Part shown: positions 422-22,535 of the stretch, piece by piece | How the letters are laid out: each line of letters starts with the position of its first letter | Numbering within the stretch: the first letter of the stretch is position 1 | Origin: Guillardia theta CCMP2712 | Lineage: Eukaryota > Protista > Cryptophyta | Assembly: GCF_000315625.1 (NCBI RefSeq) | Contig: NW_005434486.1 | Coordinates: forward strand, 57,783-93,634 | Direction of reading: 5' to 3' | Length of the DNA: 35,852 bases | The notes under the pieces: generated by a model | The model's database searches: none | What the model saw: only the letters and a program-made list of their open reading frames with translations | What the model was told of the DNA's origin: nothing | Made by a program: the position numbers and the translations under genes

Positions 422-3400
422 CTAAAGATATGCAAGAGTGATTTCCGAGCAATGGACACGTTGGAGCATGGGAGAGGCGAAGGGAGGAGGGGTTTTCAGC
501 ATCTCCTCCCAGGCATCTTCATCCCCCTGATCAGGAGTTCGTAAGGAGGTACAGGAGACGTCAAGGATATGGTCAGAGGGCAGGAAGCAGATTAGGAGAA
601 AGCAGGCAGGCAGGAGAGGAGGAGAGGAGGAGGAGAGGAGGAGAGGAGGAGAGGAGGAGAAGGCAGGTGGGAGAGGAGGAAAAGGCAGGGGCCGCAGGGG
701 TAGAAGAGGAGGCAGGGGTAGAGAGAGGAGAAGGCAGGGGTAGAGAGAGGAGAAGGCAGGGGTAGGGAGAGGAGAAGGCAGGGGAGGGGTTACGGACCTC
801 ATGGACGACGAGGGATGCCGTCCTAGCGTTGCCGCTCGTCCACTTGAACTTCCCCAGGGTCTGGCACAACGAGGAGTAGATGGAGGACGGAGAGTCGGCA
901 ACAAAGGAAGCGAATCTTCCCCGTCCAGCCGCTCCATGCTTGTCGATCCTGCACAAGGGCGGCAAGGCAACGATCGCATGCTCAAGTTGGAGGAGGTTGG
1001 AGGGGAGGGAGGATAGGAGGTACTCGACGTCGACTAGGAGGAGTCGAACCTTGTTGGCCCTGTGAAGCTCCACGATCAGAAGCTCGTCGTCGCTCATGAC
1101 AACACGCCCGTCTCCTGCTCCTGCTCCTCCTGCTCCTGCTCCTGATCCCGCTCCTGCTCCTGTTCTCAGCATCCGCTTGCCGAGTAGGCCGACGCCATGG
1201 GAGGCAAGGGCCGACAGAGACTGATCTTGGAAGACAGCAGCCACTCTGAATAAGTCCTCGTCCGCCTCCTGCTCTGCTACCTTCCTTGCTACCAGCATGC
1301 TGAGCCGTCGAGCTTCTCCGAAGGTCCTGCAGACGACCAGGGACGGTCTGCCTGCGGTCCTCCCGACGAGGTTGAGGATGGTCCTGTCGGGGGAGGAGCC
1401 TCGTGGGAAGGAGAGGATCTTGAGGGTGACTCCGATGGGGATGCCATGGCGGAAAGGGAGGAAGCAGGAGGGAGGAGGGACATGCAACCAGCGCTGTATG
1501 TCATTGACGTTGTTGATGACGGAGCTGACGAGCGTTATCATCCTCGTCCTCTTCTTCTCCACCTCTGTACTCTGCTGCTTCTTGACAGCTGCCGCTGCCA
1601 GCTCCAACTCTGCGCATGTTGCTCCCGGCTGGAGGCCATGGACGATGACCACTCGAGCTTGTGACAGGAGGAGAGGACCGTCGAGGGTTAGCAGGCCCTC
1701 TGCTCCTAGCACGTGCAAGTTTGCCGAGCTGGTGACATCGCAGCAGGACACCTCGGTCTCGAACTGCTGCTGGAACTTCAGTCCCCACTGCCTGTACCAC
1801 TTCCAGGCCTCAGCTCGGTCCTTGCAGACGATGACAACCTTTGACCTGCCGCATGCGCCGTTGCCTCTGTCGATCCTCGCTGCCTCCCGTTCCCAGCTCT
1901 CCAGCTCCTGGAAGACCGCAAACATCGCGACCCTCTCCAGCGTCTCCCTCAGCCATTCCTCTCCTGCCATGAGGAAGTCTTCAAACGTATGTCGCAGCTG
2001 AAAGAAGGTACTGGTCATGATGGAATTCATGCTCTCGCTCGTGCTCGAGGGAAAGAGAAATTTTCTCTCCCGGGCTGAGAGGACAGAGGTGGGCAGAGGC
2101 GGGACAGCAGCGATCGTTGAGCACCGCGATCGAACTCCACCGGGCTTGTCGTTGTTGAACAAGGAGGTTGCCGAGCGCAAGACAAGTTGAGTCTTGCACT
2201 GCAGCCAGCGGTCAGAAAGAGCAGTGATGAGCAGGGGAAAGACTCGGTCTCTTGCGATGACGCATCGAACTGTGGTTGAGTTGTGCAGCTTGCTGAAGGA
2301 TAGCCTGTCTGAGAAGATGACCGTACCCTGGCTGTCCTGCAGGTGGACCAAGAACGTTTCCTGGGGGGACCGTGAAGACAGAGATGCGTTGAAGACGATC
2401 TTAAACAACCTCTCTCCGTAACTTTGAGCTTCGGCTGCAATCTCGACACGTGGGAACGACTGGGCGAGTTGCACGACGTACATCAGGTCCCTTTCTGGCA
2501 GCTGGTTCCCAACGATCCTCCTCAGTGGCAGCAGGGAGGAGCAGGCAGCGAGAGCTGCTGTGTCAACTCCTTGACGCTGCAAGGCAGCCAGCGCCTCCGT
2601 CAACCCTGACGGCACCATCGCCGCCCTCTGCATCCTGACATGCTTGCTCCTGCCCTCTGCCTGCTGGTTACGGTTCAGCTCGTATCCATAGAGCGGATGG
2701 TACAGGATGGGCACTTGAAGCTCCACGGCGATGGCCCAGGAGGAGGCTATCTCAGCGGTCTTTGCACAATCTTTCAGCAGCGACAGGTCGGATATTGCGC
2801 GAAAGACGCGGATGCAGTTCTGAAAGACGTACTGCGCATCGGAGGAGATGGAAGGGGTAGAAAATTCCCTCCTCAATGTGAACATCTGGATCATTACTGC
2901 AACCTTGTGCGATGCTGTTAACTCCCCTCCTGCTCCTCCTCCTTCTCCCCCCGCCCAATCTCGATGTAGCACAAGTTGTCCATCACTTGCCGCAGCTCCT
3001 CCTCCTCCTCAGCCCTCACGTTGATGCTCGCCATCTCGTCGCTGCCCGCCGCCAGCATCAGGATGTCATACATGGTCGAGTTGGGAGAGACTCTAGCAAG
3101 GATGTCTCGAGCTGAAGTCAAGCTCAGGTAGTGCTGGCTGACAACCTGTGCATACTTGGTCGGTAGGAACGAGGGAGGGTCAGCAACGCTGACGATCAGG
3201 CCGGAAGACAACAGCTTCTCAAGGGTCTTGTTGGCATGCCTTAGGAGCATCGAGTTTACCACGCCCTCCGCCTCCTCCTTCGATGCGCTCCTTGCCCTCG
3301 ACGCGTCCTGACTACTTCTCAACCTCGCACAGAAGAAGGTCTTTGAAATCCAGTCCAACACCTCCTCCAGGTTTGAGATGCTTCCCGCCGCTATCTCAGC

Positions 3401-5590
3401 GTTGATGTGCAATTCCATCACGTCCTCCATCCTGCTCTCGATCGGAACCTGCGCTGTCATCCTGCTGAGGATGAGCTGGAGCTTCTTCCGGCTGCATAGC
3501 ACGTACGCGTCGCCCTCTGCGTCAAACTGCGGCCTCCCTGCCCTCCCAAACATCTGCTGCAGCTCCAAGGCTGTTATCTCTTCCTCCCGCCCTGCGTTAG
3601 GGTCGAAGTACTCCACTCCCTTGATGATCACTACCCGCGCTGGCAGGTTCACCCCCCATGCTAGCGTCGACGTGGACACCAGTAGAGCAAGCGCCCCATC
3701 CTCAAACGCTCGTTCCACCACCGTCCTATCCTGCCTCGTCATCCCCGCATGATGCACAGCGATCCCGTTCATGGTCATAGACGGCAGCCTCCGATCCCGC
3801 AAGTTGCCCAGGTACCGCTGGTGCTTCTTCCATGCTCCCAGCCTCCCGTTCTCCTCCGTTGGTGCGATCATCTTCACGCATCTCTCCTCCTGCGCTCTCA
3901 GTAGCAAGAACTCTGCAGTCTTCACCGTGTCCTTCCTGGTGTGCACAAACACCAGCACGTGCTGTCCCATCCTGATGTGTCTTATCACCCGATCCCAGCA
4001 CGCTTCGAGCAGCGCCTCCTTGATGCCCCCCATCGCTCTCCCAGCTCCTCTCGCTCCTGCCCTTGTACCTGCTCCTGCTCCTCCTGCCACTGCCGCAGCT
4101 GCCAGTGCTCCTCCTCCTCCCCCTCCTCCTCCTGCTTCCACTGCTGCTGCATCCGCTTCTGATGGTGGTGGTAGTGCATCTGCTGCGTCTGCACCTCCTG
4201 CTGCTCCTACTCCTACCCCGACAAAGTGCTGAGCAAGAGGCACAGGACGGGTCTCAGGCCCGAAGGTGAAGAGGCCAGCATCCTCTTCAACGTGGAGGAA
4301 CCTCGCCACGTCCTTGAAGTTCGGCAGGGTAGCAGACAGTCCCACCAGGCGCAAGTAGCTGCCTGCTATCTCCGCATGCCGCAGGAAGCGAGCAACCAGC
4401 GCTTCTACCACAGGCCCTCTGTCCTCGTTCAGGATCTGGACCTCGTCAACAATCATCAGCGAGATCCTCTGCATCAGGACTAGCGAACTTGGTGGCTTCC
4501 TAGTCATGACATCCAGCTTCTCCGGCGTGCAGACCATCACGCTAGCCCGCGAGACATCGGCAGGTGACGTCACCATGTCTCCTGTCACCTCCACCACGCT
4601 CGCGTTCACCCGAGAGAGCATGCGCGTCAGAGTGCGGGTGACCTCTGCTGCAAGGGCCTTGAGGGGGGCGATGTAGACTACCAAGACCCTCCCCCCGTCT
4701 CCTCGCATCTTCTCTTCTCGATCCAACTCACGGAGGATCACGCTCACAGCAACGTTAGTCTTCCCTGCTCCTGTAGGCGCAAGCACCAGCAGGTTCTTGC
4801 TGGTCTCGAACGCCACTGGGAACACAGCGCTCTGCATGCGGTTGAGAGCTCGGATGTGGCTGGGAAAAACATCCTTCCACTTGCCAAACTTCTCCACGGG
4901 GACGAGGTTGACGTCAGACGCGTTCTTCCTCGGCAGTGAGGGGATGGAACACTCGATGATCCTCCTCGACTTGTCCTCCAGCCACACAAAGCGCGAGCAA
5001 GCCCCATCTCTCGTGGAAGGAGCTGGTAAATTGCCATGCGCGACCAGCCCATCGTCATCGTCGTCGCACACGAGGCTTGCTTGTGCATGCGGTCGCCACC
5101 TCATCACTTGCTCCTGATTCATCAACGTCCATGCTATCAGCTCCTCCCCTCTTTCACCAAGCAGGTCCCAAAGATCGCTCTGCGGATCGTTCCCCGCCAA
5201 ACATGCTTGAAGCAACCTTGCAAGATCTTCCTTGGTTGTGAACAACAATCCAGACGCAGCATCAGTATCGTCTATGAACTTCTGACAGAGATGGAGAACA
5301 GTCTCGTCTTGCTTCACGTTCCCTTCCCCACCAACAAGGAGCAGGTTTGAACCCAGCTTCAACGATTTGATCTCCTTCTCATACGTGTGAAGTTTGGCAC
5401 TGAGCCTCAAAGATCTGCTAGCGTGAGAACTTTCACTGACAATAACGAGGAAAAACGTCCAGCACAAGAGACTTTTGACCATGTCTGTGCTTCGATCCTG
5501 GTTGAGACTACCCTCTTCCAATAGTTCAAATCTCCTCCCCTGCTGGCCCCTCGCAGCAAACACAGTAATAAGTTCGCAATGTGAGTGCAT
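422..5590 (-). CDS. Ski2-like double-cassette DExH helicase (Brr2/ASCC3/Slh1 type): intact N-terminal cassette + Sec63 + degenerate C-terminal cassette; both ends approximate
   Basis: ORF 2918..5590 has LNRMQS, Walker A APTGAGKT (4757-4780), PLKAL, TPEK, DEVQ, LSAT, HHAG, TSTLAWGVNLPA and QMFGRAGRPQFD. ORF 573..2972 continues the Sec63 domain (SHKVAVMIQ..SDAQYVFQNCIRVFRA) and a second RecA-like pair. Probable intron ~798-527 (GTCCGT..CAG) joins VVHE to GDEDAWEEMLKTPPPFASPML. The frame changes at ~2945-2957. Confidence 0.85.
595..790. repeat. Purine-rich (GGA/GAGAG/GGCAGGGG) low-complexity tract inside a predicted helicase intron
   Basis: Repeated gagaggag and gagaggagaaggcagggg units are directly visible. 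Confidence 0.8.
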
Positions 5591-8696: not shown

Positions 8697-9898
8697 TCAC
8701 TCTTCCTTCAGGAGCCTGATGTCTTCCTTGCACTGTGAGCAAAGTTAGAACGTCTGCACTGAGCAGGAGAGAGTGGGGTAACAAACAACACACTATGAAC
8801 CAACAACATCTCACAGACAGGCGAGGCAAGGGAAAGCACGCACCTCTTCTATCGCCTTCAAGATGTAGTTGTATCTATCAACATCGAACGACTTGATCCT
8901 GTACAAGTTCACCCTCGACTTATCGATCATCTGCTGCCTCCAGCCCTCGAGCGAGAACTCCTCCTTCTTCGCTGCATACCACACATAGAAGAAGCAGATC
9001 GGCCCCATGGTGGAGACGAAGAACGATATCGGCTCAACAATGTCCCACGAGTACTCCCAGTACGTCATCCTGAAGAGCAACCCGAACGCAGTCAAAGGGA
9101 TACACCCTCCTATCCAGATGTTCCTGTTCGCCTCCCGCTCCGCTGCCTCGTCGATGAGCGTCTTGGCTGTGGACAGAGCCTCAAGCTCCTTGCTCAGAGT
9201 CTGCAGCTCTTGCTCCCTCCTCTCTATCTCCTGCGTCTTCATCGCACCGGTGAGGTCGAACGTTGCCCAGATGGTGTCAATGACGTCCTGAGGTTTGATA
9301 AACACAGTCTCTCGTAGAGCAGTGTTGGACGTGTTGCTGAAGTTGAGGACGATGCCTGACTGATGGAAGGATTCGAGGAGGCTCATAGACTCTTGCTCTC
9401 GGAAGCCGTACTTGCTGCACAGCCGGCAGAAGTCCAACCTGGAGATCTTCTGCTCCCCCATCGAGCTGAGCTCCTTCCTGACCTTAATGACGTCAACCTT
9501 CTTCAGCAGGTCTTCCATGGGAACATCTGCACGTCTTACTCAGTGAAGCTCCTCGCTCGGTCTCTCCTCCTCCTCCTACCTGTCGTGGTCCCTGCAAACC
9601 TCCTCTGTGTCCAACCCCACGCCGTCCTCTGCCGCAGCTGTACCACCTCCCTCACGCTCCTCCTCGTCACTTCGTGAAATGATGATCCCTCGTAGCCATC
9701 CCGCCTGCACATCCTCATGATCCCTGCAACCTCTCCTCCTCCTCCTCCTCGTCCCCATGCTGCTGCTGCTGCTCCTCCTCCTCCTCCTCGTCCCCATGCT
9801 GCTGCTGCTGCTGCTCCTCCTCCTCCTCCCCAGATGCTTCGTCCCCCCCGCCCGGCCTGCGCCAACCCCCCGAGCCTCTTCAACATTGCTAGTGCCAT
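8697..9898 (-). CDS. MCU: Mitochondrial calcium uniporter pore subunit, 3 exons
   Basis: Exons 9898-9580, 9526-8844 and 8732-8697. A coiled coil precedes TM1-YWEYSWDIVEPISFF-TM2 (WDxxEP selectivity filter). The N-terminus is Arg/Ala/Gly-rich and presequence-like. Confidence 0.92.
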
Positions 9899-15677: not shown

Positions 15678-16214
15678 CTTCGGATAGTCTCCGAACAGAG
15701 CATGAACGTGACTTGGCGGGTCATCAGCATCGGCTGGTTGAAACACGCGCAGGTGTTTGCCTGCCGCCCGGCATTGCGGGGATGCGAAGCTCCGTGACGT
15801 AGGGTCCTATTGTCACATAAAATGACCGGTACCCACTGACTTTGTGAGCTATTGCTGGGAGACACGGTCCGACCCAGCCCTCAGGCTATCGTATTTCATA
15901 AGTGACGACCTAATCGCAAAGTGCGATCCCCTCCTCTTCTCTTCTCAGCACACCTCCCGATGTAGGTCGGCCTCTATTCCCCGTTTTAGCTTCCCACCTG
16001 TTCCACCTGCTATCCCGCCGCCCACCTTCAACTTGAAGGCTCCGCTATCTCCTCCTCCTCTGCCTCCTCTGCCTCCTCTGCCTCCTCCTCCTCTCTTCTT
16101 CTCCCTCTCGTACTCTCTTGCTTCGCTGAAGGCTGTTGGATTAGCTTTTAACAGTGCTGCGCATCAAGTTGACTTCTGTTCTCTTTGCACCCTGTCATTC
16201 GAACTTTTAAGGGA

Positions 16215-19200
16215 ATGAAGCGTCCTCATGATGAGAAGCTCGGTCCATCCAAGCATCAAAAAAACGAGCCCAAATACCGCCTGGTCAACAGTGCTTGTTT
16301 GAGCACTGGAAACGTTTACAACCTAGAAAAGGATGCTGACAAGCTCGGTTTGACCAAGACCTCAGGAGATCGTTATGTGCTGAAAGGCTCGCAAGGTTTA
16401 TTCTCTGCAGTACATTTGAATGACAGGCAAATCCTTTGGGAGAGCAGTGGTCCAGTGGTGGATGCAGATGTCAAAGAGATACTGCTCTTTGCAGCAGAGC
16501 ATGATCAAGCCATTCACGTCAATACTGCGGTACATGGAGAAGAAAAAGATAGCAAATTGAATACGCAAGATCCGAACTCCTTCGAGTTTCTGATCGAAGA
16601 TTACAACAATGCTAAAGATCCAATGTTCAAGAAAGATTTTCAAGCCTCTGTGCACCCAGTTTGCGACCAGAGTCCGCCGATTGCTCCCCACGGAGCGAAC
16701 ATGATTATCAATGCCTGGTGCCATAGCGTCAGTTTCAAATTTGCTGAGAAGTTGGATCACAAATCCGGCACAATACCACTAGAACGATGGGAAACGCTAT
16801 CCATCGCAGCAAGATTGGTCAAAGCTTTGCTGTTCAAACCAAAGATTTCTTTGATGGATGATTACATCGAGGGCATCCTCGAAGGATACGTGGAGATCAA
16901 CTGTACAGCAACCGATCCAGACGATGTCAAGAGCAAAGCGATCACTTCAGCTGATCTTCTCGTTCAATTCACAGAAAGCAACCATAAAGTCCTGCTCCTT
17001 CAAGGAGCTGCAGGAAGCGGGAAGTCTACGACAGTAAAGAAGTGGACCCATCAACTTTGGGGGCAATGGACTGTAGGGTGTCCTGTACCAATCTTCCTGA
17101 TCCTCTCAAGCGGCAAACGAGTGAGAGATTATGTAAACGAGCGACTGGAGGAGCAGCTCTGTGAGGATGAATGGAGGAGATTTGTCGAATTCAACAAGTT
17201 CATGTTGGTATTGGATGGTTACGACGAGCTCGGAGAGGAAGTGAATGTCGTGAAGAAGTTCGTTGAAGAACTGCGAGGCAGTATTGAAAGCAAGGTGATC
17301 ATTACTTGCAGAAGCAACTTTCTCAAGAGCGGAGGCAAGTCCTCTACTCTTTTCTATCCAGATGACACAGGGAAGAAGTCTCTGCTTGAATTTTGGATTT
17401 GTCCCCTCAGTCTGAATCAGGCTAGATACTTTGTTGAAAGTTTTCTAAAACAAGATCGCTCATCGATGAAGAATCACTGGGACAAGGAAAAATATCGGAA
17501 TGCTTTGGATTCTAAACCAGAATTGCAGAAGCTTGCCATTACGCCTTTGGCTTTGAAACTGGTAATTTCTACCCTCCCTCGATTGTGTTCGAAGATGAAC
17601 GACTCTTCTGAAGCTTCTAAACTTACAACATTCGATCTGTACATTGAACATGCTGAAAATTGTTTTTGTCGTGAATGGTTTAAGCTGCAAAAGACAGATT
17701 TGGTCATGGAAAAAATTTTTGTCAAGGAAGCAAATTACCAGCACAAATTTTTTCAGGCTGTTCAAGCGATTTCCTTGGAAATGCTTCGCCAGGGCAAAAG
17801 CCGACTTGAATGTCAAACTTCTCAGCTACTGTTACAGAATGAGCCTTTTCTGATGTCACCTGCACTTGCTGCACAGGAGCAAGCAGGATACAGGCTGCTT
17901 TCAGAGTATCTGATACAAAAACACGTTGCATGCAAACAGCTTTCTGAGGTCATAAGTATTGAGTTTGTTCACGAAAATTTCAGAAGCTTTTTCCTTGCCA
18001 AAGACACATTTGAACGAGTGAAGTCCTACGATGCCAGTACTCAGTCGCAAATTGAAGGACTGAGCATTCGTTTGCTGAACAACGATTTGGAGACGATCAA
18101 TTTTCATGCGGTGATTGTCCAGAGTTCAGACGAGTACAAAGATAAACTGTTTGATATCATTCGTGCTTCCCGCAACGCAGAGTCCGAAGACTGTGCGACA
18201 GTAATAGCAGCAGCGAACGCAGCCACTATCCTGACGACCGCAGGAGTCTCATTTTCAGGATTAGATTTGTCTGCAGTTAAAATCTGTGGTGCTGTATTAC
18301 GGAATGGCATTTTTCATCAAACCAACTTCAAGGGAGCCAACCTGTCACGGGTCGATGCTAGCTATGCGTGTTTCTTGGAGACTGATCTAGAGGAAACGAA
18401 CATGGACGGACTGATCTTAAGCGAGTACCCGTGCTTCCTTGACGAGGCAGATGTTGAATTCAATTGTATAAGCTACTCCCCAGATGGCAAACATGTTTGC
18501 TATGGATCATCCGGAGGAGAGATATGGAAATTGGCATTTGAAGAAGGAGGAAAGCAGAGTTTGCATATGCTCGGAAACAATTTGGGAGAAAGCATACAAA
18601 AATTGGTGCATGGACAGGATGGAGAAACTCTTTGTGTTGCATCAGATCGCAGCGTTCAATTGTGGAACATCAAGAATGAGACTTGTTTGTTTACACACAG
18701 AATCTTTGACCCGGAGCTTCTTTCTAAAGACCTCAAAGACAGCATTTTAGACATAACTATCACAAATGATGTCAAATATCTCGTTGTCAGTTTGTATTCA
18801 GGTTCTGTTTGCGTTTTTAATGCAAAATCTGGTGTGCTTCATCACAAATTAGTACTAGATAATGAGATATCATGCAGTTACTGTGAAAACAATGACAACA
18901 TTCTGCATACTGCGTCTTTCAGTGGGCTCATACAGACGTGGAACTTGGAAACGGGAGTATGCATAGAGAAAAATGATAGCTTTCAGCAGGAGGGTACCAA
19001 CTTCTGGTTCAGTCCCGATGGAAGGTTTCTCGCATTCTACTCTAATGGGATGGTACATATTGGAGAAGTTGAGTCAGGACAGCTGATGCTGAAAATCCGC
19101 GGGGCCATGGAGGACATAGAAATTGTCTTCTTCGATCCTGACGGCAACAGACTTGCATGCAGGACTGACAGTAGCTCCATCGAGATCTGGGACCTGCGAC

Positions 19201-22200
19201 AAGCCTCGTGCCTTCACTCCTTCCATACCCGCGACGATCATCTCTCGGTCTTGCGCTGGAGGCCTGACGGGAAGGCTCTGGCGACGGGATGGGAGGACGG
19301 GTTGATCCAGGTGTGGGACGTGGAGACTGGGAGGTGCGTGCGGTCGCTAGAGGGGCACAGAGAAGAGGTGGAATGCATGAGCTGGGGGCCAGACGGGAAG
19401 ACACTTGTGTCAGTCTCGATTGATAGTCCCGTAAGGGTTTGGAATTTGAGCGAGGGCAGAAGTTTTAAACACTCCCATGGTCCTATCACAACAGTTAAAT
19501 GTCTTGAGTTTGCAAGCGACGGGAAAACTCTTGCAGCTGGATGCAACGATGGCACCATTCAGATATGGAATACAGAAGACGACGAGCTCCAGCAGTCCAT
19601 GAAAGGACAGTCTTCGACCACATGGAATCCGGACGGGCAGACGCTTTTATCACTTTCGCAAGGGGAGATGTCGATATGGAATTCGAGATCGGGAGAACGC
19701 AAGAAATGGTTTGATAGAACGAGCACTGATATTGTTTCGAGCATCGACTGGAGCGCAGACGGTAAAATCGTCTTCATGTGTACTGATGAACATATCTTTG
19801 AATTTTGGAATACAAAAAGAGACGAGCTCCAACGCACTTTAACAAAAGAAATCAAACAAACTCCTCAAGTGATGTGGAGTCCAGATGGCAAGAGAGTTTC
19901 TCATGTATTTGAAGACGCTTCCATCATTGATTTGTGGGATTTACAAGCCTGCACAGAGCTGCATCTGCATAACGAGGTGCATGAGGTGGCGAGAGTGTTC
20001 TTGCTCGGCTCAGACTTTACCATGATTGCTAGTTGTGTAGGGATGGACAAGAACATAAGCTTGTTGGACCTGGAAACAAAACGAACTGTTCGAGTACTGG
20101 AAGGGCATACAGCAGAGATCACATACTTTACGTTTCGAGCAGAGAGCAAGATGCTTGCCTCGGCATCTGACGACTGTACTATCCGAATATGGGACATTGA
20201 GAGCGGAAATTGTCTGAAGATACTTCAGAAAACCGCAGAGGAAGTGACATTCCTACGATTTGACGAGCTAGAGGGAGATGTTCTTGTCTCAGGATCACTC
20301 AACGGTATGATACAAGTGTGGAGAGTGGATTCAGAAGAATGTCTGCACCTTCTAGAGGGTCACAAGGATGAGATAGCTTACCTAGAAGTATCGAGAGCTG
20401 GGAAATGGATTATCTCTGAATCAAAAGATAACACCAAGAGGATCTGGGATGTAGAGAACAACACGATATTCCGCAGTATGGAAACAATTTCATCTGCTTC
20501 CTTTCTTGCCTTCGATCCTGACGGCAACAGACTTGCATGCAGGACTGACAGTAGCTCCATCGAGATCTGGGACCTGCGACAAGCCTCGTGTCTTCACTCC
20601 TTCCATACCCGCGAGGTTCTTCTCTCGGTCTTGCGCTGGAGGCCTGACGGGAAGGCTCTGGCGACGGGATGGGAGGACGGGTTGATCCAGGTGTGGGACG
20701 TGGAGACTGGGAGGTGCGTGCGGTCGCTAGAGGGGCGCAGGGACGCAGTGCAATGCATGAGCTGGGGGCCAGACGGGAAGAAACTTGCGTGTGGGTATCT
20801 GCAAGGTGACGTTCGACTTTGGGACGTTGACTCTGGTGAAGCTCAAGCGCTGGAAACAAGAATTAGAGTCGCAACTTGCTTTAAACAAGATCCTGGCAAG
20901 AAGTTAGTGGCAGCTGGATCACAGAATGGAGTTGTCAGCCTGTGGGATGTGAAGACTGGAGAGTGTAAGGAAAAGCTTCGTGGCATCGTTGAAAACTTTA
21001 TCACGTGTTTGAGTTGGCATCCCAATGGATGCTTGCTTGCTGCTGGTGATAACAAGGGTTTGATTCAAGTTTGGAACGTGGGAGAATCGACGTCAACCCC
21101 AAACGTGTTTGAGGGCCATACGGAGGAAGTGTTGATGTTGAGGTGGAGCTCCGACGGGACGAGCTTGGCATCGACAGCACACGACATGACCCTTCGAGTG
21201 TGGGAGATGTCAAGAGAAGGACACGGGCACGTCCAGGCAGTGAGCGACGCGCGAGGAGTCTGTCTCAGCTGGAGTCCTGATGGGAGGCACATCGCGTCAG
21301 GGTGGGATGACGAGGCCCTTCGGCTTTGGGAAGTTGGACCTCAAGGCATTGAGTGCAGTTTACACGAGCCTGACCTGCCTCAAATTCTCAGCTTGAGCTG
21401 GAAGGTGGACAGTGAGGTGTTTGCCTCGGCACATGGAGACACAACGATAAGAATATGGAACGCACAGTCCAAGCTTTGCTTGCGAACTTTGCTACACATA
21501 ACATCAGACGTGTCGTGCTTGAGTTGGGCACCTTGTGGAACAAAGCTTGCCTTTGCTTCAGACGAAACAAAACTCGAGGTTTGGGATGTTGAAAACGAGA
21601 GAAGTTTACATCTTCATGACAACGGACTTTCCTATGATGCGTTGGCTTGTTGGAGTATAGACGGCAAGAAAATCACGACAGCATCCAACGGAGGAATAGT
21701 GCAAGTGTGGGATGTGAAGTCAGGTCTGAGACAAGGAGCTTCGAAGATGTTCGTTCATCACGTCAGCTGCTTGAGCTGGAGCCCCGACCGAAGAACATTG
21801 GCCGTCTGTCTCCGGGACGAAGTCGTCATAGAGGTTTGGGACGTCGAACAGAATGTCTGCAAGCACGAGCTGAGAGGTGAATGGCCTTCCGAGTACTTGA
21901 GCTGGGGGTCAGCAGGCAAGATACTGATCTCGAGCTCCGAGTTGGGAGAGATCGGAGTATGGAACGTCGATTCAGGGACATGCATCAACAATATCGATAC
22001 AAAGCTGATGATCAACTGCATCTGTTGTAGACCAGACGGAAAGATGGTTGTAATAGGATCACAAGATGCCATCTTACAGACATGGAAGACACGATCTGGT
22101 CAGCATGTTCAGACGATACAGTTTCACACTGAAAAGATCGAGGTGAAAAGCATGAGCTGGGGGCGCGATGAGAGCATTCTTGCCGTGGCAAGTTCACAAG

Positions 22201-22535
22201 TTTCAATCATGATCTTTGCGCTTTCAGAAGTCGATCTGCTCTATCTTGTCAAGGTATACAGTCAGAGTGAGTCGATTCTCAATTGTGCTGGCACTCGGAT
22301 CCGTGGGGCAACTATGTCAGAGGAGACAAGAAGGTTGTTGAAACAACGAGGAGCTATCGATAGTTCAGATCCAGAGTCTGCCGACGAGGAGGAGGAGGAA
22401 GAGGAGGAGGAGGAGGAGGAGGAGGAAGAGGAAGAGGAGGAGGAGGAGGAGGAGGAGGAGGAGGAGGAGGAGGAGGAGGAGGACGACAACGAAGATGGAG
22501 ATGAAGATAAAGCAGCCCCAAAGGAGTTGAGTTGA
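16215..22535 (+). CDS. Intronless NLR-like STAND protein: putative N-terminal H/D/C peptidase-like domain, NACHT NTPase, pentapeptide repeats, WD40 repeats, poly-Glu tail
   Basis: Single ORF with first ATG at 16215. Walker A GAAGSGKST (17004-17030), Walker B LVLDGYDE (~17205-17228), KVIITCR, TPLAL and FVHENFRSFF. Pentapeptide region FSGLDLSAV..TNFKGANLS (~18250-18420), many WD40 repeats (~18450-22250), and closing motif LNCAGTRIRGATMSEETRRLLKQRGA. Confidence 0.93.
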   Translation: MKRPHDEKLGPSKHQKNEPKYRLVNSACLSTGNVYNLEKDADKLGLTKTSGDRYVLKGSQGLFSAVHLNDRQILWESSGPVVDADVKEILLFAAEHDQAIHVNTAVHGEEKDSKLNTQDPNSFEFLIEDYNNAKDPMFKKDFQASVHPVCDQSPPIAPHGANMIINAWCHSVSFKFAEKLDHKSGTIPLERWETLSIAARLVKALLFKPKISLMDDYIEGILEGYVEINCTATDPDDVKSKAITSADLLVQFTESNHKVLLLQGAAGSGKSTTVKKWTHQLWGQWTVGCPVPIFLILSSGKRVRDYVNERLEEQLCEDEWRRFVEFNKFMLVLDGYDELGEEVNVVKKFVEELRGSIESKVIITCRSNFLKSGGKSSTLFYPDDTGKKSLLEFWICPLSLNQARYFVESFLKQDRSSMKNHWDKEKYRNALDSKPELQKLAITPLALKLVISTLPRLCSKMNDSSEASKLTTFDLYIEHAENCFCREWFKLQKTDLVMEKIFVKEANYQHKFFQAVQAISLEMLRQGKSRLECQTSQLLLQNEPFLMSPALAAQEQAGYRLLSEYLIQKHVACKQLSEVISIEFVHENFRSFFLAKDTFERVKSYDASTQSQIEGLSIRLLNNDLETINFHAVIVQSSDEYKDKLFDIIRASRNAESEDCATVIAAANAATILTTAGVSFSGLDLSAVKICGAVLRNGIFHQTNFKGANLSRVDASYACFLETDLEETNMDGLILSEYPCFLDEADVEFNCISYSPDGKHVCYGSSGGEIWKLAFEEGGKQSLHMLGNNLGESIQKLVHGQDGETLCVASDRSVQLWNIKNETCLFTHRIFDPELLSKDLKDSILDITITNDVKYLVVSLYSGSVCVFNAKSGVLHHKLVLDNEISCSYCENNDNILHTASFSGLIQTWNLETGVCIEKNDSFQQEGTNFWFSPDGRFLAFYSNGMVHIGEVESGQLMLKIRGAMEDIEIVFFDPDGNRLACRTDSSSIEIWDLRQASCLHSFHTRDDHLSVLRWRPDGKALATGWEDGLIQVWDVETGRCVRSLEGHREEVECMSWGPDGKTLVSVSIDSPVRVWNLSEGRSFKHSHGPITTVKCLEFASDGKTLAAGCNDGTIQIWNTEDDELQQSMKGQSSTTWNPDGQTLLSLSQGEMSIWNSRSGERKKWFDRTSTDIVSSIDWSADGKIVFMCTDEHIFEFWNTKRDELQRTLTKEIKQTPQVMWSPDGKRVSHVFEDASIIDLWDLQACTELHLHNEVHEVARVFLLGSDFTMIASCVGMDKNISLLDLETKRTVRVLEGHTAEITYFTFRAESKMLASASDDCTIRIWDIESGNCLKILQKTAEEVTFLRFDELEGDVLVSGSLNGMIQVWRVDSEECLHLLEGHKDEIAYLEVSRAGKWIISESKDNTKRIWDVENNTIFRSMETISSASFLAFDPDGNRLACRTDSSSIEIWDLRQASCLHSFHTREVLLSVLRWRPDGKALATGWEDGLIQVWDVETGRCVRSLEGRRDAVQCMSWGPDGKKLACGYLQGDVRLWDVDSGEAQALETRIRVATCFKQDPGKKLVAAGSQNGVVSLWDVKTGECKEKLRGIVENFITCLSWHPNGCLLAAGDNKGLIQVWNVGESTSTPNVFEGHTEEVLMLRWSSDGTSLASTAHDMTLRVWEMSREGHGHVQAVSDARGVCLSWSPDGRHIASGWDDEALRLWEVGPQGIECSLHEPDLPQILSLSWKVDSEVFASAHGDTTIRIWNAQSKLCLRTLLHITSDVSCLSWAPCGTKLAFASDETKLEVWDVENERSLHLHDNGLSYDALACWSIDGKKITTASNGGIVQVWDVKSGLRQGASKMFVHHVSCLSWSPDRRTLAVCLRDEVVIEVWDVEQNVCKHELRGEWPSEYLSWGSAGKILISSSELGEIGVWNVDSGTCINNIDTKLMINCICCRPDGKMVVIGSQDAILQTWKTRSGQHVQTIQFHTEKIEVKSMSWGRDESILAVASSQVSIMIFALSEVDLLYLVKVYSQSESILNCAGTRIRGATMSEETRRLLKQRGAIDSSDPESADEEEEEEEEEEEEEEEEEEEEEEEEEEEEEEEEDDNEDGDEDKAAPKELS
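19130..19401 (+). repeat. Copy 1 of a 272-bp internal duplication in the WD40 region
   Basis: Matches 20510-20781 with 10 substitutions and no indels (manual alignment); offset 1380 bp, in frame. Confidence 0.95.
20510..20781 (+). repeat. Copy 2 of the 272-bp internal WD40 duplication
   Basis: Matches 19130-19401 at about 96%. Confidence 0.95.
22386..22482 (+). repeat. (GAG/GAA)n coding microsatellite, poly-Glu tail
   Basis: About 32 consecutive Glu codons near the end of the NLR-like ORF. Confidence 0.95.

What the first reader, a model, noticed from the sequence alone, without database searches (positions are those of the whole stretch)
16215..16800. NLR-like receptor whose N-terminal effector looks like a bacterial Tox-HDC toxin peptidase
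Seen: the ~200 aa before the NACHT domain contain IHVNTAVHG (His107, codon 16533), FEFLIED (Asp129, 16599), SVHPV and MIINAWCHS (Cys169, 16719), numbered from the ATG at 16215. Knowledge: the polymorphic-toxin domain Tox-HDC (Pfam PF15656) is a predicted peptidase with an H, D/N, C triad, which I recall as I-x-(S/T)-G-x-HG ... F-x-x-ED ... hydrophobic strand-x-C-x-S. Protease effectors on STAND receptors drive cell death in bacteria and fungi. Inference: this is a ligand-activated, oligomerising protease, i.e. an algal innate-immunity or cell-death receptor using a toxin-derived effector. I know of no description of this architecture in algae. The family match is from memory, not from a search.
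Basis: partly seen in the sequence, partly recalled or inferred. Interest (0 to 1): 0.9.

Follow-up and report, generated by a model that had tools for sequence, protein, structure and literature searches.

The report
Algal NLR-like receptor with Tox-HDC tip
A cryptophyte alga carries an intronless 2,106-residue immune-receptor-like gene (switch ATPase plus WD40 sensor) whose tip is a true relative of Tox-HDC, a predicted bacterial toxin enzyme that nobody has tested in the laboratory. Intracellular bacteria fuse the same tip to the same kind of switch.

Summary
All four motifs sit at the stated codons in one open frame (16215-22535, +).

- The window copy itself gets no Pfam hit. Six of its 11 own-genome paralog N-termini hit PF15656 Tox-HDC, and no other family hit more than one.
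- A scan of 1.8 billion proteins gave 43 relatives. Ten of them match Tox-HDC and three I checked pass Pfam's cut-off.
- A profile-profile comparison of the algal copies against the non-algal copies gives E = 1.7e-43.
- C169 is invariant in 48 sequences. H107 and D129 are kept in at least 90%.

All ten other full-length paralogs examined share the layout: Tox-HDC-like domain, NACHT-type ATPase, pentapeptide repeats, WD40.

Bacterial relatives (Chlamydiota, Bdellovibrionota and others) join the same domain to NACHT, NB-ARC-TPR, STAND-LRR or ankyrin repeats.

The predicted fold is confident (pLDDT 85.6). It is a generic alpha/beta sandwich with no close solved relative and no caspase match.

The enzyme chemistry, activation by oligomerisation and an immune or cell-death role are inferred, not shown. 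I could not measure whether the triad residues cluster in 3D.

The searchable papers mention Tox-HDC only in its 2012 definition. This scan had already reported the same family on two other paralogs of this genome (s1-437022, s1-430485), with the same conclusion.

The parts
16215..22535 (+). Whole intronless coding sequence: 2,106 residues plus the stop codon
   Evidence: Single ORF. The first in-frame ATG lies 15 codons after a stop. Paralogs also start M-K-R.
16215..16274 (+). Basic, poorly ordered N-terminal tail (residues 1-20)
   Evidence: pLDDT 57-60 in the model. The tail is variable and gappy among paralogs.
16275..16784 (+). Tox-HDC-like domain (residues 21-190). It has a small N-terminal beta subdomain (about 21-77) and an alpha/beta core (about 78-190). 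The Pfam model corresponds to about residues 70-180.
   Evidence: pLDDT above 90 over residues 21-190. hhalign against non-algal relatives covers residues 17-183 at E 1.7e-43. The Pfam hits on relatives span the region equivalent to residues 70-180.
16512..16538 (+). Motif 1, IHVNTAVHG (H101, N103, T104, H107, G108). It is the family's [S/T]GxHG signature; here the Gly is Ala105.
   Evidence: The motif is defined in PMC3482391.
16581..16601 (+). Motif 2, FEFLIED (F125, E128, D129). D129 is the family's conserved D/N by elimination.
   Evidence: D129 is kept in at least 90% of 48 sequences and is invariant in the 32 non-algal ones. It lies in helix 122-133 of the model.
16647..16661 (+). SVHPV strand (S145, H147)
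   Evidence: S145 is kept in at least 90% of 48 sequences. H147 is invariant only among the algal paralogs. It forms strand 144-148.
16701..16727 (+). Motif 3, MIINAWCHS (W168, C169, S171). C169 is the predicted nucleophile.
   Evidence: W168 and C169 are invariant in 48 sequences. C169 lies between strand 163-166 and helix 171-174.
16785..16988 (+). Helical linker between the effector and the NTPase (residues 191-258)
   Evidence: Helices 197-213 and 218-223 at pLDDT 51-66. Conserved only among the cryptophyte copies.
16989..17315 (+). NACHT NTPase core (residues 259-367). Walker A is at 17004-17027 and Walker B at 17202-17228.
   Evidence: PF05729 scores 30.5 bits against a cut-off of 26.7. 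Motif positions.
18312..18410 (+). Pentapeptide-repeat segment (residues 700-732)
   Evidence: PF00805 scores 30.4 bits against a cut-off of 20.2.
18444..22214 (+). WD40 array of roughly 30 blades (residues about 744-2000; the end is approximate)
   Evidence: Many WD40 and beta-propeller families match with E down to 1e-225. W-D type motifs recur about every 42 residues.
19130..19410 (+). First copy of a 281-nt in-frame WD40 duplication
   Evidence: 96% identical to 20510-20790.
20510..20790 (+). Second copy of the 281-nt WD40 duplication
22386..22481 (+). Run of 32 glutamates near the C-terminus

Best explanation
The gene encodes an NLR-like STAND receptor of a cryptophyte alga, probably Guillardia theta. 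From N to C it has a roughly 170-residue domain that is a divergent member of the Tox-HDC family, a NACHT NTPase with intact Walker A and B motifs, a short pentapeptide-repeat segment, about 30 WD40 blades and a poly-Glu tail. The likeliest mechanism is as follows. The WD40 propellers bind a trigger. The NACHT module exchanges nucleotide and oligomerises. Crowding of the N-terminal domains then switches on a Cys169-His107-Asp129 thiol enzyme, most likely a peptidase. That enzyme cleaves or modifies proteins of the alga's own cell, giving cell death or a defence signal. The domain order, the homology to Tox-HDC, the conservation of H, D and C, and the recurrent fusion of this domain to STAND NTPases in bacteria are shown here. 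The enzyme activity, the way it is activated and the biological role are inferred.
For: Architecture. Family identity: 6 of 11 paralog N-termini hit PF15656, and no other family hit more than one. Ten of 43 phmmer relatives hit it, best E 9.5e-9. P0016 (25.0 bits), P0007 (21.7) and P0020 (21.3) exceed the 21-bit cut-off. hhalign of the algal profile against the non-algal profile gives probability 100 and E 1.7e-43 over 161 columns. Catalytic-type conservation: C169 is invariant, and H107 and D129 are kept in at least 90% of 48 sequences. The model is confident (pLDDT 85.6, pTM 0.78) and places H107 and C169 a few residues past the ends of strands 100-104 and 163-166. That fits the published prediction of an alpha/beta sandwich with the catalytic residues at strand ends (PMC3482391). 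Effector role: the domain is N-terminal to a NACHT-type NTPase in nine of the ten other paralogs examined, and the tenth has the same layout. It is also N-terminal to an NTPase in Hanusia phi proteins. In bacteria it is joined to NACHT (P0024), NB-ARC-TPR (P0033) and STAND-LRR in Chlamydiota. Nuclear eukaryotic origin: the paralogs lie on 11 different contigs. The neighbouring genes are a Brr2-like helicase and MCU. The cryptophyte copies form one clade with 99% support.
Against: The window copy gets no Pfam, NCBIfam or PADLOC hit even at E 10, and it has Ala in place of the near-invariant Gly105. No Tox-HDC protein has been tested biochemically as far as the searchable papers show. The original authors left peptidase versus transglutaminase open. 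The model puts D129 inside a helix rather than at a strand end, and the tools give no coordinates, so I could not check triad geometry. Fold searches found only generic Rossmannoid matches (best Z 6.8) and no peptidase. No read data could be laid, so expression of this copy is unverified. The homodimer prediction gave no verdict.
Confidence: 0.62

Rival explanations
1. The architecture and activation logic are the same, but the Tox-HDC domain is not a protease. It would be a transglutaminase or deamidase, or another cysteine-dependent enzyme, that modifies rather than cleaves its targets.
For: The family's authors themselves proposed 'thiol peptidase or a transglutaminase' (PMC3482391). No peptidase fold was found. 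Several Foldseek searches gave weak, non-significant hits to Cys-dependent phosphatases, which also carry the Cys at a strand-to-helix junction.
Against: The phosphatase matches have E of at least 0.04 and TM of at most 0.37. The CX5R phosphate-binding loop is absent: only S171 is conserved after C169. Nothing favours transglutaminase over peptidase, and an H, D, C set fits both.
Confidence: 0.25
2. The protein is a STAND-type scaffold or signalling ATPase with no role in immunity or cell death. The N-terminal domain would act as a binding or adaptor module rather than an enzyme.
For: No functional data exist. WD40-rich STAND proteins can be scaffolds. D129 is not at a strand end in the model.
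Against: Invariant Cys, His, Asp and Asn residues persist across sequences only about 25-30% identical from algae and bacteria. That pattern is typical of catalysis, not of adaptors. The domain family was defined in secreted toxins. The gene family has expanded to about a dozen diverged paralogs, and the sensor carries a near-identical internal WD40 duplication, as in diversifying NLR repertoires.
Confidence: 0.08
3. The N-terminal domain is a caspase-like (clan CD: caspase, C80 and similar) peptidase rather than Tox-HDC.
For: The H-G motif after a strand and the Cys after a hydrophobic strand resemble the clan CD layout. The 2012 paper expected a caspase- or flavodoxin-like sandwich.
Against: No caspase or C80 family hit appears at E 10 in the window copy or the paralogs. 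No caspase, gingipain or CPD chain is among the top 50 of 48,161 chains aligned (Z at least 4.3), nor in the Foldseek lists.
Confidence: 0.03
4. The gene is bacterial contamination of the assembly, or a dead relic.
For: The ORF has no introns, and its domain relatives are mostly bacterial.
Against: A 6.3-kb intact frame cannot persist by chance. The flanking genes are eukaryotic (Brr2-like helicase, MCU). Eleven paralogs lie on different contigs. Relatives in Hanusia phi interleave with the paralogs in the tree.
Confidence: 0.02

Closest known systems
Tox-HDC (Pfam PF15656), the C-terminal toxin module of bacterial and phage polymorphic toxins. Its prototype is the APSE phage toxin of Hamiltonella defensa; it also occurs in Coxiella, Xenorhabdus and Photorhabdus (Zhang et al. 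2012, PMC3482391).
   Same: It has the same three motifs: [S/T]GxHG, a conserved Asp and an invariant Cys. It has the predicted alpha/beta sandwich. There is direct Pfam similarity for 6 of 11 paralogs and profile-level homology.
   Different: Here the domain is at the N-terminus of an intracellular eukaryotic STAND receptor, not at the C-terminus of a secreted RHS-type toxin. It carries an extra conserved N-terminal beta subdomain (residues about 21-70) outside the Pfam model. The window copy is too diverged to hit the Pfam model itself and has Ala at the conserved Gly of motif 1.
Fungal NACHT-WD40 NLRs (HET-E/NWD type) and the NACHT-pentapeptide-WD40 proteins of Mortierellaceae and their Mycoavidus and Glomeribacter endosymbionts
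   Same: They share the tripartite layout of effector, NACHT and WD40. The NACHT-to-pentapeptide core is 25-28% identical over about 96% of its 530 residues. The window gene also has a highly similar internal WD40 duplication.
   Different: PF15656 was not visible in the precomputed Pfam lists of those hits, but the lists are cut short. I did not test their N-terminal domains.
Bacterial NLR-related and Avs-type STAND defence proteins (bNACHT, Avs1-5)
   Same: An N-terminal enzymatic effector, a STAND NTPase and a C-terminal repeat sensor. Bacteria do fuse this same Tox-HDC-like domain to NACHT, NB-ARC-TPR and STAND-LRR.
   Different: There is no significant PADLOC match (best hit 18.8 bits, on the P-loop only). 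The host is a eukaryotic alga. The bacterial carriers I could name are mostly Chlamydiota and Bdellovibrionota rather than classic phage-defence model organisms.
Apaf-1/caspase-9 and NLRC4/caspase-1 (proximity-activated cysteine protease downstream of a STAND oligomer)
   Same: The proposed logic is the same: a repeat sensor, a nucleotide-driven oligomer and proximity activation of a Cys-His enzyme.
   Different: Here the enzyme is fused to the receptor rather than recruited through CARD domains. It shows no detectable caspase fold.

Membership tests
Tox-HDC (PF15656) | Motif 1, the [SGxH] signature | tested here: met
   The window has T104-A105-V106-H107-G108. Most paralogs and the bacterial relatives have TGTHG. 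H107 is kept in at least 90% of 48 sequences and G108 is invariant. The deviation is Ala105 in place of the near-invariant Gly.
Tox-HDC (PF15656) | A conserved D or N between the His and Cys motifs | tested here: met
   D129 is kept in at least 90% of 48 sequences and is invariant in the 32 non-algal sequences. Assigning it as the family's D/N is by elimination: it is the only such conserved residue between the two motifs.
Tox-HDC (PF15656) | An absolutely conserved Cys | tested here: met
   C169 is invariant in all 48 aligned sequences.
Tox-HDC (PF15656) | The window protein itself scores above Pfam's gathering cut-off (21 bits) | tested here: not met
   There is no hit at E up to 10 for residues 1-230. 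The six-frame genome search with the family model also found nothing, but its controls did not ring either, so that search is uninformative.
Tox-HDC (PF15656) | Homology to family members shown through profiles or intermediates | tested here: met
   Six of 11 paralogs hit PF15656 (best E 1.2e-4). Ten of 43 phmmer relatives hit it. P0016, P0007 and P0020 exceed the cut-off. Precomputed Pfam lists PF15656 for P0016, P0033 and P0024. hhalign gives E 1.7e-43.
Tox-HDC (PF15656) | An alpha/beta three-layer sandwich with H, D/N and C at the ends of three successive strands, close in space | tested here: inconclusive
   The model is alpha/beta and confident. H107 follows strand 100-104 and C169 follows strand 163-166, but D129 sits in helix 122-133. 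The tools do not expose coordinates, so no distances could be measured.
Tox-HDC (PF15656) | Thiol peptidase or transglutaminase activity | not testable with these tools
   The activity is only predicted in the literature as well (PMC3482391).
NLR-like STAND receptor (NACHT clade) | NACHT domain above the Pfam cut-off, with Walker A and Walker B | tested here: met
   PF05729 scores 30.5 bits against 26.7. GAAGSGKS lies at 264-271 and MLVLDGYDE at 330-338.
NLR-like STAND receptor (NACHT clade) | Tripartite layout: N-terminal effector, central NOD, C-terminal repeat sensor | tested here: met
   The same layout is seen in the ten other paralogs examined.
NLR-like STAND receptor (NACHT clade) | Ligand-triggered oligomerisation and an immune or cell-death output | not testable with these tools
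   Inference only. The homodimer prediction gave no verdict.
Caspase-like / clan CD peptidases | Sequence-profile or fold similarity to caspase, gingipain or C80 | tested here: not met
   No such Pfam family appears at E up to 10. None is among the top matches of Foldseek PDB, VIA-align wide, Atlas or BFVD.
Cys-dependent protein phosphatases (PTP/DSP) | The HCX5R(S/T) phosphate-binding loop | tested here: not met
   After C169 only S171 is conserved and there is no conserved Arg at +6. The structural matches are non-significant (E at least 0.04, TM at most 0.37).

The most novel reading that the evidence does not exclude
Tox-HDC is a so far uncharacterised class of executioner enzyme activated by NLR-type receptors. 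It has a fold without a solved relative. It is shared, probably through horizontal transfer, between cryptophyte algae and bacteria that live in or prey on other cells (Chlamydiota, Bdellovibrionota). In the alga a dozen diversified receptors would use it as a fused, caspase-independent death or defence protease.
Probability: 0.35. Interest if true: 0.75.

Novelty: new variant of a known kind. Interest (0 to 1): 0.6.

Why it matters
NLR-type receptors are known from animals, plants, fungi and bacteria. Their repertoires in secondary-plastid algae are barely described. Tox-HDC has existed only as a 2012 computational prediction.

A family of about a dozen intact algal receptors carries this domain, and bacteria show the same fusion. 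That gives a natural setting in which the domain's activity is expected to be switch-controlled and therefore testable. It would add a new effector class to the list of NLR outputs. It also points to gene exchange between protists and their intracellular bacteria.

The finding is not unique to this window. It is one paralog of a family this scan has already reported twice.

Tried and rejected
- **Direct family scans.** Pfam, NCBIfam and PADLOC scans of residues 1-230 gave nothing at E up to 10.
- **Six-frame genome search.** PF15656 against the genome found nothing, but the control genomes also stayed silent, so this is uninformative.
- **Long relatives.** The word-indexed search for relatives of 1,160-3,700 residues sharing the N-terminal domain found none. 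The length limits and the possible withholding of this genome's own proteins make that blank meaningless.
- **Fold searches.** No search gave a significant or specific match.
  - Foldseek against PDB: best E 0.04.
  - VIA-align against 48,161 chains: best Z 6.8, to IPMDH/IDH, phosphotransacetylase, Mur-ligase C-domains, SRP GTPases and PTPs.
  - ESM Atlas by shape: TM below 0.5 by the query.
  - BFVD: best E 0.18.
- **Other blanks.** The Atlas feature search gave no usable hit. The profile search of PDB sequences gave nothing at E up to 10.
- **Homodimer.** The prediction for residues 21-195 returned no verdict (score 0.00, controls not run). It is evidence neither for nor against.
- **Reads.** No expression, transcript-start or splice data were obtained. 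Only a local script translated the 300 bases upstream of the ATG to locate the in-frame stop.
- **Readings rejected.** The caspase/C80 and Cys-phosphatase readings were considered and rejected (see the membership tests).
Full report
**What is in the window.** A single open frame runs from 16185 to 22535 on the + strand.
- The first in-frame ATG is at 16215, 15 codons after a stop. Several paralogs also begin M-K-R.
- The product has 2,106 residues and no intron.
- Downstream, Pfam finds NACHT at 259-367 (30.5 bits against a 26.7 cut-off) and a pentapeptide-repeat segment at 700-732.
- About 1,300 residues of WD40 propellers follow.
- Walker A (GAAGSGKS, 264-271) and Walker B (MLVLDGYDE, 330-338) are intact. 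A run of 32 glutamates sits near the C-terminus.

**Host.** The assembly has 87.1 Mb in 669 contigs.
- The nearest labelled relatives of the N-terminal domain are three proteins of the cryptophyte Hanusia phi.
- The window also carries a Brr2-like DEAD/Sec63 helicase (573-5590, -) and a mitochondrial calcium uniporter exon (8811-9518, -).
- This is therefore a eukaryotic nuclear locus. From the size and contig number I infer Guillardia theta. That rests on my own knowledge, not on a tool.

**Is the N-terminal domain Tox-HDC?** The window copy gives no hit in Pfam, NCBIfam or PADLOC even at E 10. The family around it does.
- The genome holds 11 intact copies of the domain, 36-52% identical and each inside a long open frame of 794-2,120 residues. 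There is also one apparently frameshifted copy.
- I scanned the 11 N-termini one by one. Six hit PF15656 Tox-HDC (best E 1.2e-4), and no other family hit more than one.
- An exhaustive phmmer scan of 1.84 billion representative proteins found 43 relatives at E up to 1e-3. Ten of them match Tox-HDC, best E 9.5e-9.
- P0016 (25.0 bits), P0007 (21.7) and P0020 (21.3) exceed the 21-bit cut-off.
- The collection's precomputed Pfam lists name Tox-HDC for P0016, P0033 and P0024.
- A profile of the 11 algal copies aligns to a profile of the 32 non-algal relatives with probability 100 and E 1.7e-43 over 161 columns.
- I therefore file the domain as a divergent member of the family, while recording that this copy fails the direct cut-off.

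**Conservation.**
- Among the 11 paralogs, H101, N103, T104, H107, G108, E128, D129, S145, H147, N162, N166, W168, C169 and S171 are invariant.
- Across 48 algal and bacterial sequences, W75, N103, G108, W168 and C169 are invariant. H101, T104, G105, H107, G112, F125, D129, S145 and S171 are kept in at least 90%.
- These match the family's published definition: an [SGxH] motif, a conserved D/N and an absolutely conserved C. The authors predicted 'a thiol peptidase or a transglutaminase' (PMC3482391).
- The window copy has Ala at the near-invariant Gly105.

**Structure.** AlphaFold2 with the 48-sequence alignment gives mean pLDDT 85.6 and pTM 0.78, with pLDDT above 90 for residues 21-190.
- The domain has a small beta subdomain (strands 46-48, 54-56, 63-67, 73-77) and an alpha/beta core.
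- In the core, H107 follows strand 100-104, D129 lies in helix 122-133, S145 and H147 lie in strand 144-148, and C169 sits between strand 163-166 and helix 171-174.
- No solved structure is close. Foldseek against PDB gives a best E of 0.04. VIA-align over 48,161 chains gives a best Z of 6.8, to generic Rossmannoid domains. The Atlas gives TM below 0.5, BFVD a best E of 0.18, and the PDB sequence profile nothing.
- No caspase, gingipain or C80 chain appears in these lists, so the caspase-like idea is not supported.
- Weak, repeated hits to Cys-phosphatases are not backed by a CX5R loop.
- Model coordinates are not exposed by the tools.

**Architecture across relatives.**
- All ten other paralogs examined continue into a NACHT/NPHP3_N-type NTPase and/or pentapeptide repeats at the same spacing.
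- The Hanusia proteins have the domain followed by NACHT, then pentapeptide repeats and/or WD40.
- The non-algal relatives sit in compact bacterial gene neighbourhoods. They show these forms:
  - Tox-HDC with NACHT (P0024).
  - Tox-HDC with NB-ARC and TPR (P0033).
  - The domain with a STAND NTPase and LRR (P0009, P0017, P0026, P0032, L023).
  - The domain with ankyrin repeats (P0015, P0029, P0030).
  - Stand-alone proteins of 240-330 residues, one followed by a TPR gene.
- The named bacterial genomes are a Simkaniaceae MAG, two other Chlamydiota MAGs, a Bdellovibrionota MAG and a gammaproteobacterial MAG, plus an Anaerolineae MAG.
- In a maximum-likelihood tree the 16 cryptophyte sequences form one clade (SH-aLRT 99, stem length 0.94). 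Hanusia copies interleave with this genome's paralogs.
- The family therefore diversified before the two algae split. Its bacterial sister group is unresolved.

**The rest of the protein.** The NACHT-to-pentapeptide core (residues 231-760) is 25-28% identical, over about 96% of its length, to NACHT-pentapeptide-WD40 proteins of other organisms. These are Mortierellaceae fungi, their Mycoavidus and Glomeribacter endosymbionts, and the foraminifer Reticulomyxa.

**Mechanism.** By analogy with characterised NLR and Avs proteins (established knowledge), the WD40 array is the sensor, NACHT the nucleotide-driven oligomerisation switch and the N-terminal domain the output.
- Every step beyond domain identity is inference.
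- A homodimer prediction gave no verdict.
I worked beside those places afterwards.
- Two runs guessed to be RNA hold 35-46% of the sampled words of 15900-18200, which is only weak evidence of expression.
- To my knowledge the Hanusia entries derive from a transcriptome. If so, the fusion is transcribed in a sister species.

**Novelty.** In the searchable library Tox-HDC appears only in the 2012 paper and PF15656 in none. The 2020 survey of STAND-based conflict systems mentions neither HDC nor cryptophytes.
- The pairing of Tox-HDC with an NLR-like chassis therefore looks undescribed. It is a new variant of a known kind.
- It is not new to this scan. Two follow-up reports on other paralogs of the same genome reached the same conclusion (s1-437022, s1-430485). 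I re-derived their claims independently here.

Noticed in passing
window 19130-19410 and 20510-20790: A 281-nt block of the WD40 array is duplicated in frame, 1,380 nt apart, at 96% identity. This resembles the highly conserved internal repeats of fungal NLR sensors.
   Followed up: partly
window 16905-18494 (residues 231-760): The NACHT-pentapeptide core is closest (25-28% identity, about 96% coverage) to proteins of Mortierellaceae fungi, their Mycoavidus and Glomeribacter endosymbionts, and Reticulomyxa. This patchy distribution suggests the chassis moves horizontally.
   Followed up: no
L018 5076-6164 and 6175-9402; L025 3483-4574 and 4583-7747: In two unrelated bacterial metagenome contigs a U-box gene lies immediately upstream of the gene for the Tox-HDC-like domain joined to a STAND NTPase and LRR. 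This may be a conserved two-gene unit in Chlamydia-like bacteria.
   Followed up: no
L015 8001-8726 and 8996-10861: A stand-alone Tox-HDC protein (241 residues, 25 bits) is followed by a separate 621-residue TPR gene. It looks like a split version of the fused Tox-HDC, NB-ARC and TPR protein P0033.
   Followed up: no
G000:C44:476634-477211 (L012/L013): One paralog of the domain is split between two overlapping frames near residues 126-131, with short open frames of 148 and 492 residues. It is apparently a frameshifted copy. I left it as it is.
   Followed up: no
L010 1501-3531 (-): In the paralog on contig C118 the frame stays open for about 470 residues upstream of the Tox-HDC-like domain. 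This could be an extra N-terminal region or just untranslated open frame.
   Followed up: no
window 573-5590 (-) and 8811-9518 (-): The neighbouring genes are a Brr2-like DEAD/Helicase_C/Sec63 helicase, read as two long ORFs, and a mitochondrial calcium uniporter exon. They are ordinary eukaryotic genes and show that the locus is nuclear.
   Followed up: partly
window 22386-22481: A run of 32 consecutive glutamates (GAG/GAA repeats) lies near the C-terminus of the receptor. Its function is unknown.
   Followed up: no
   Followed up: no
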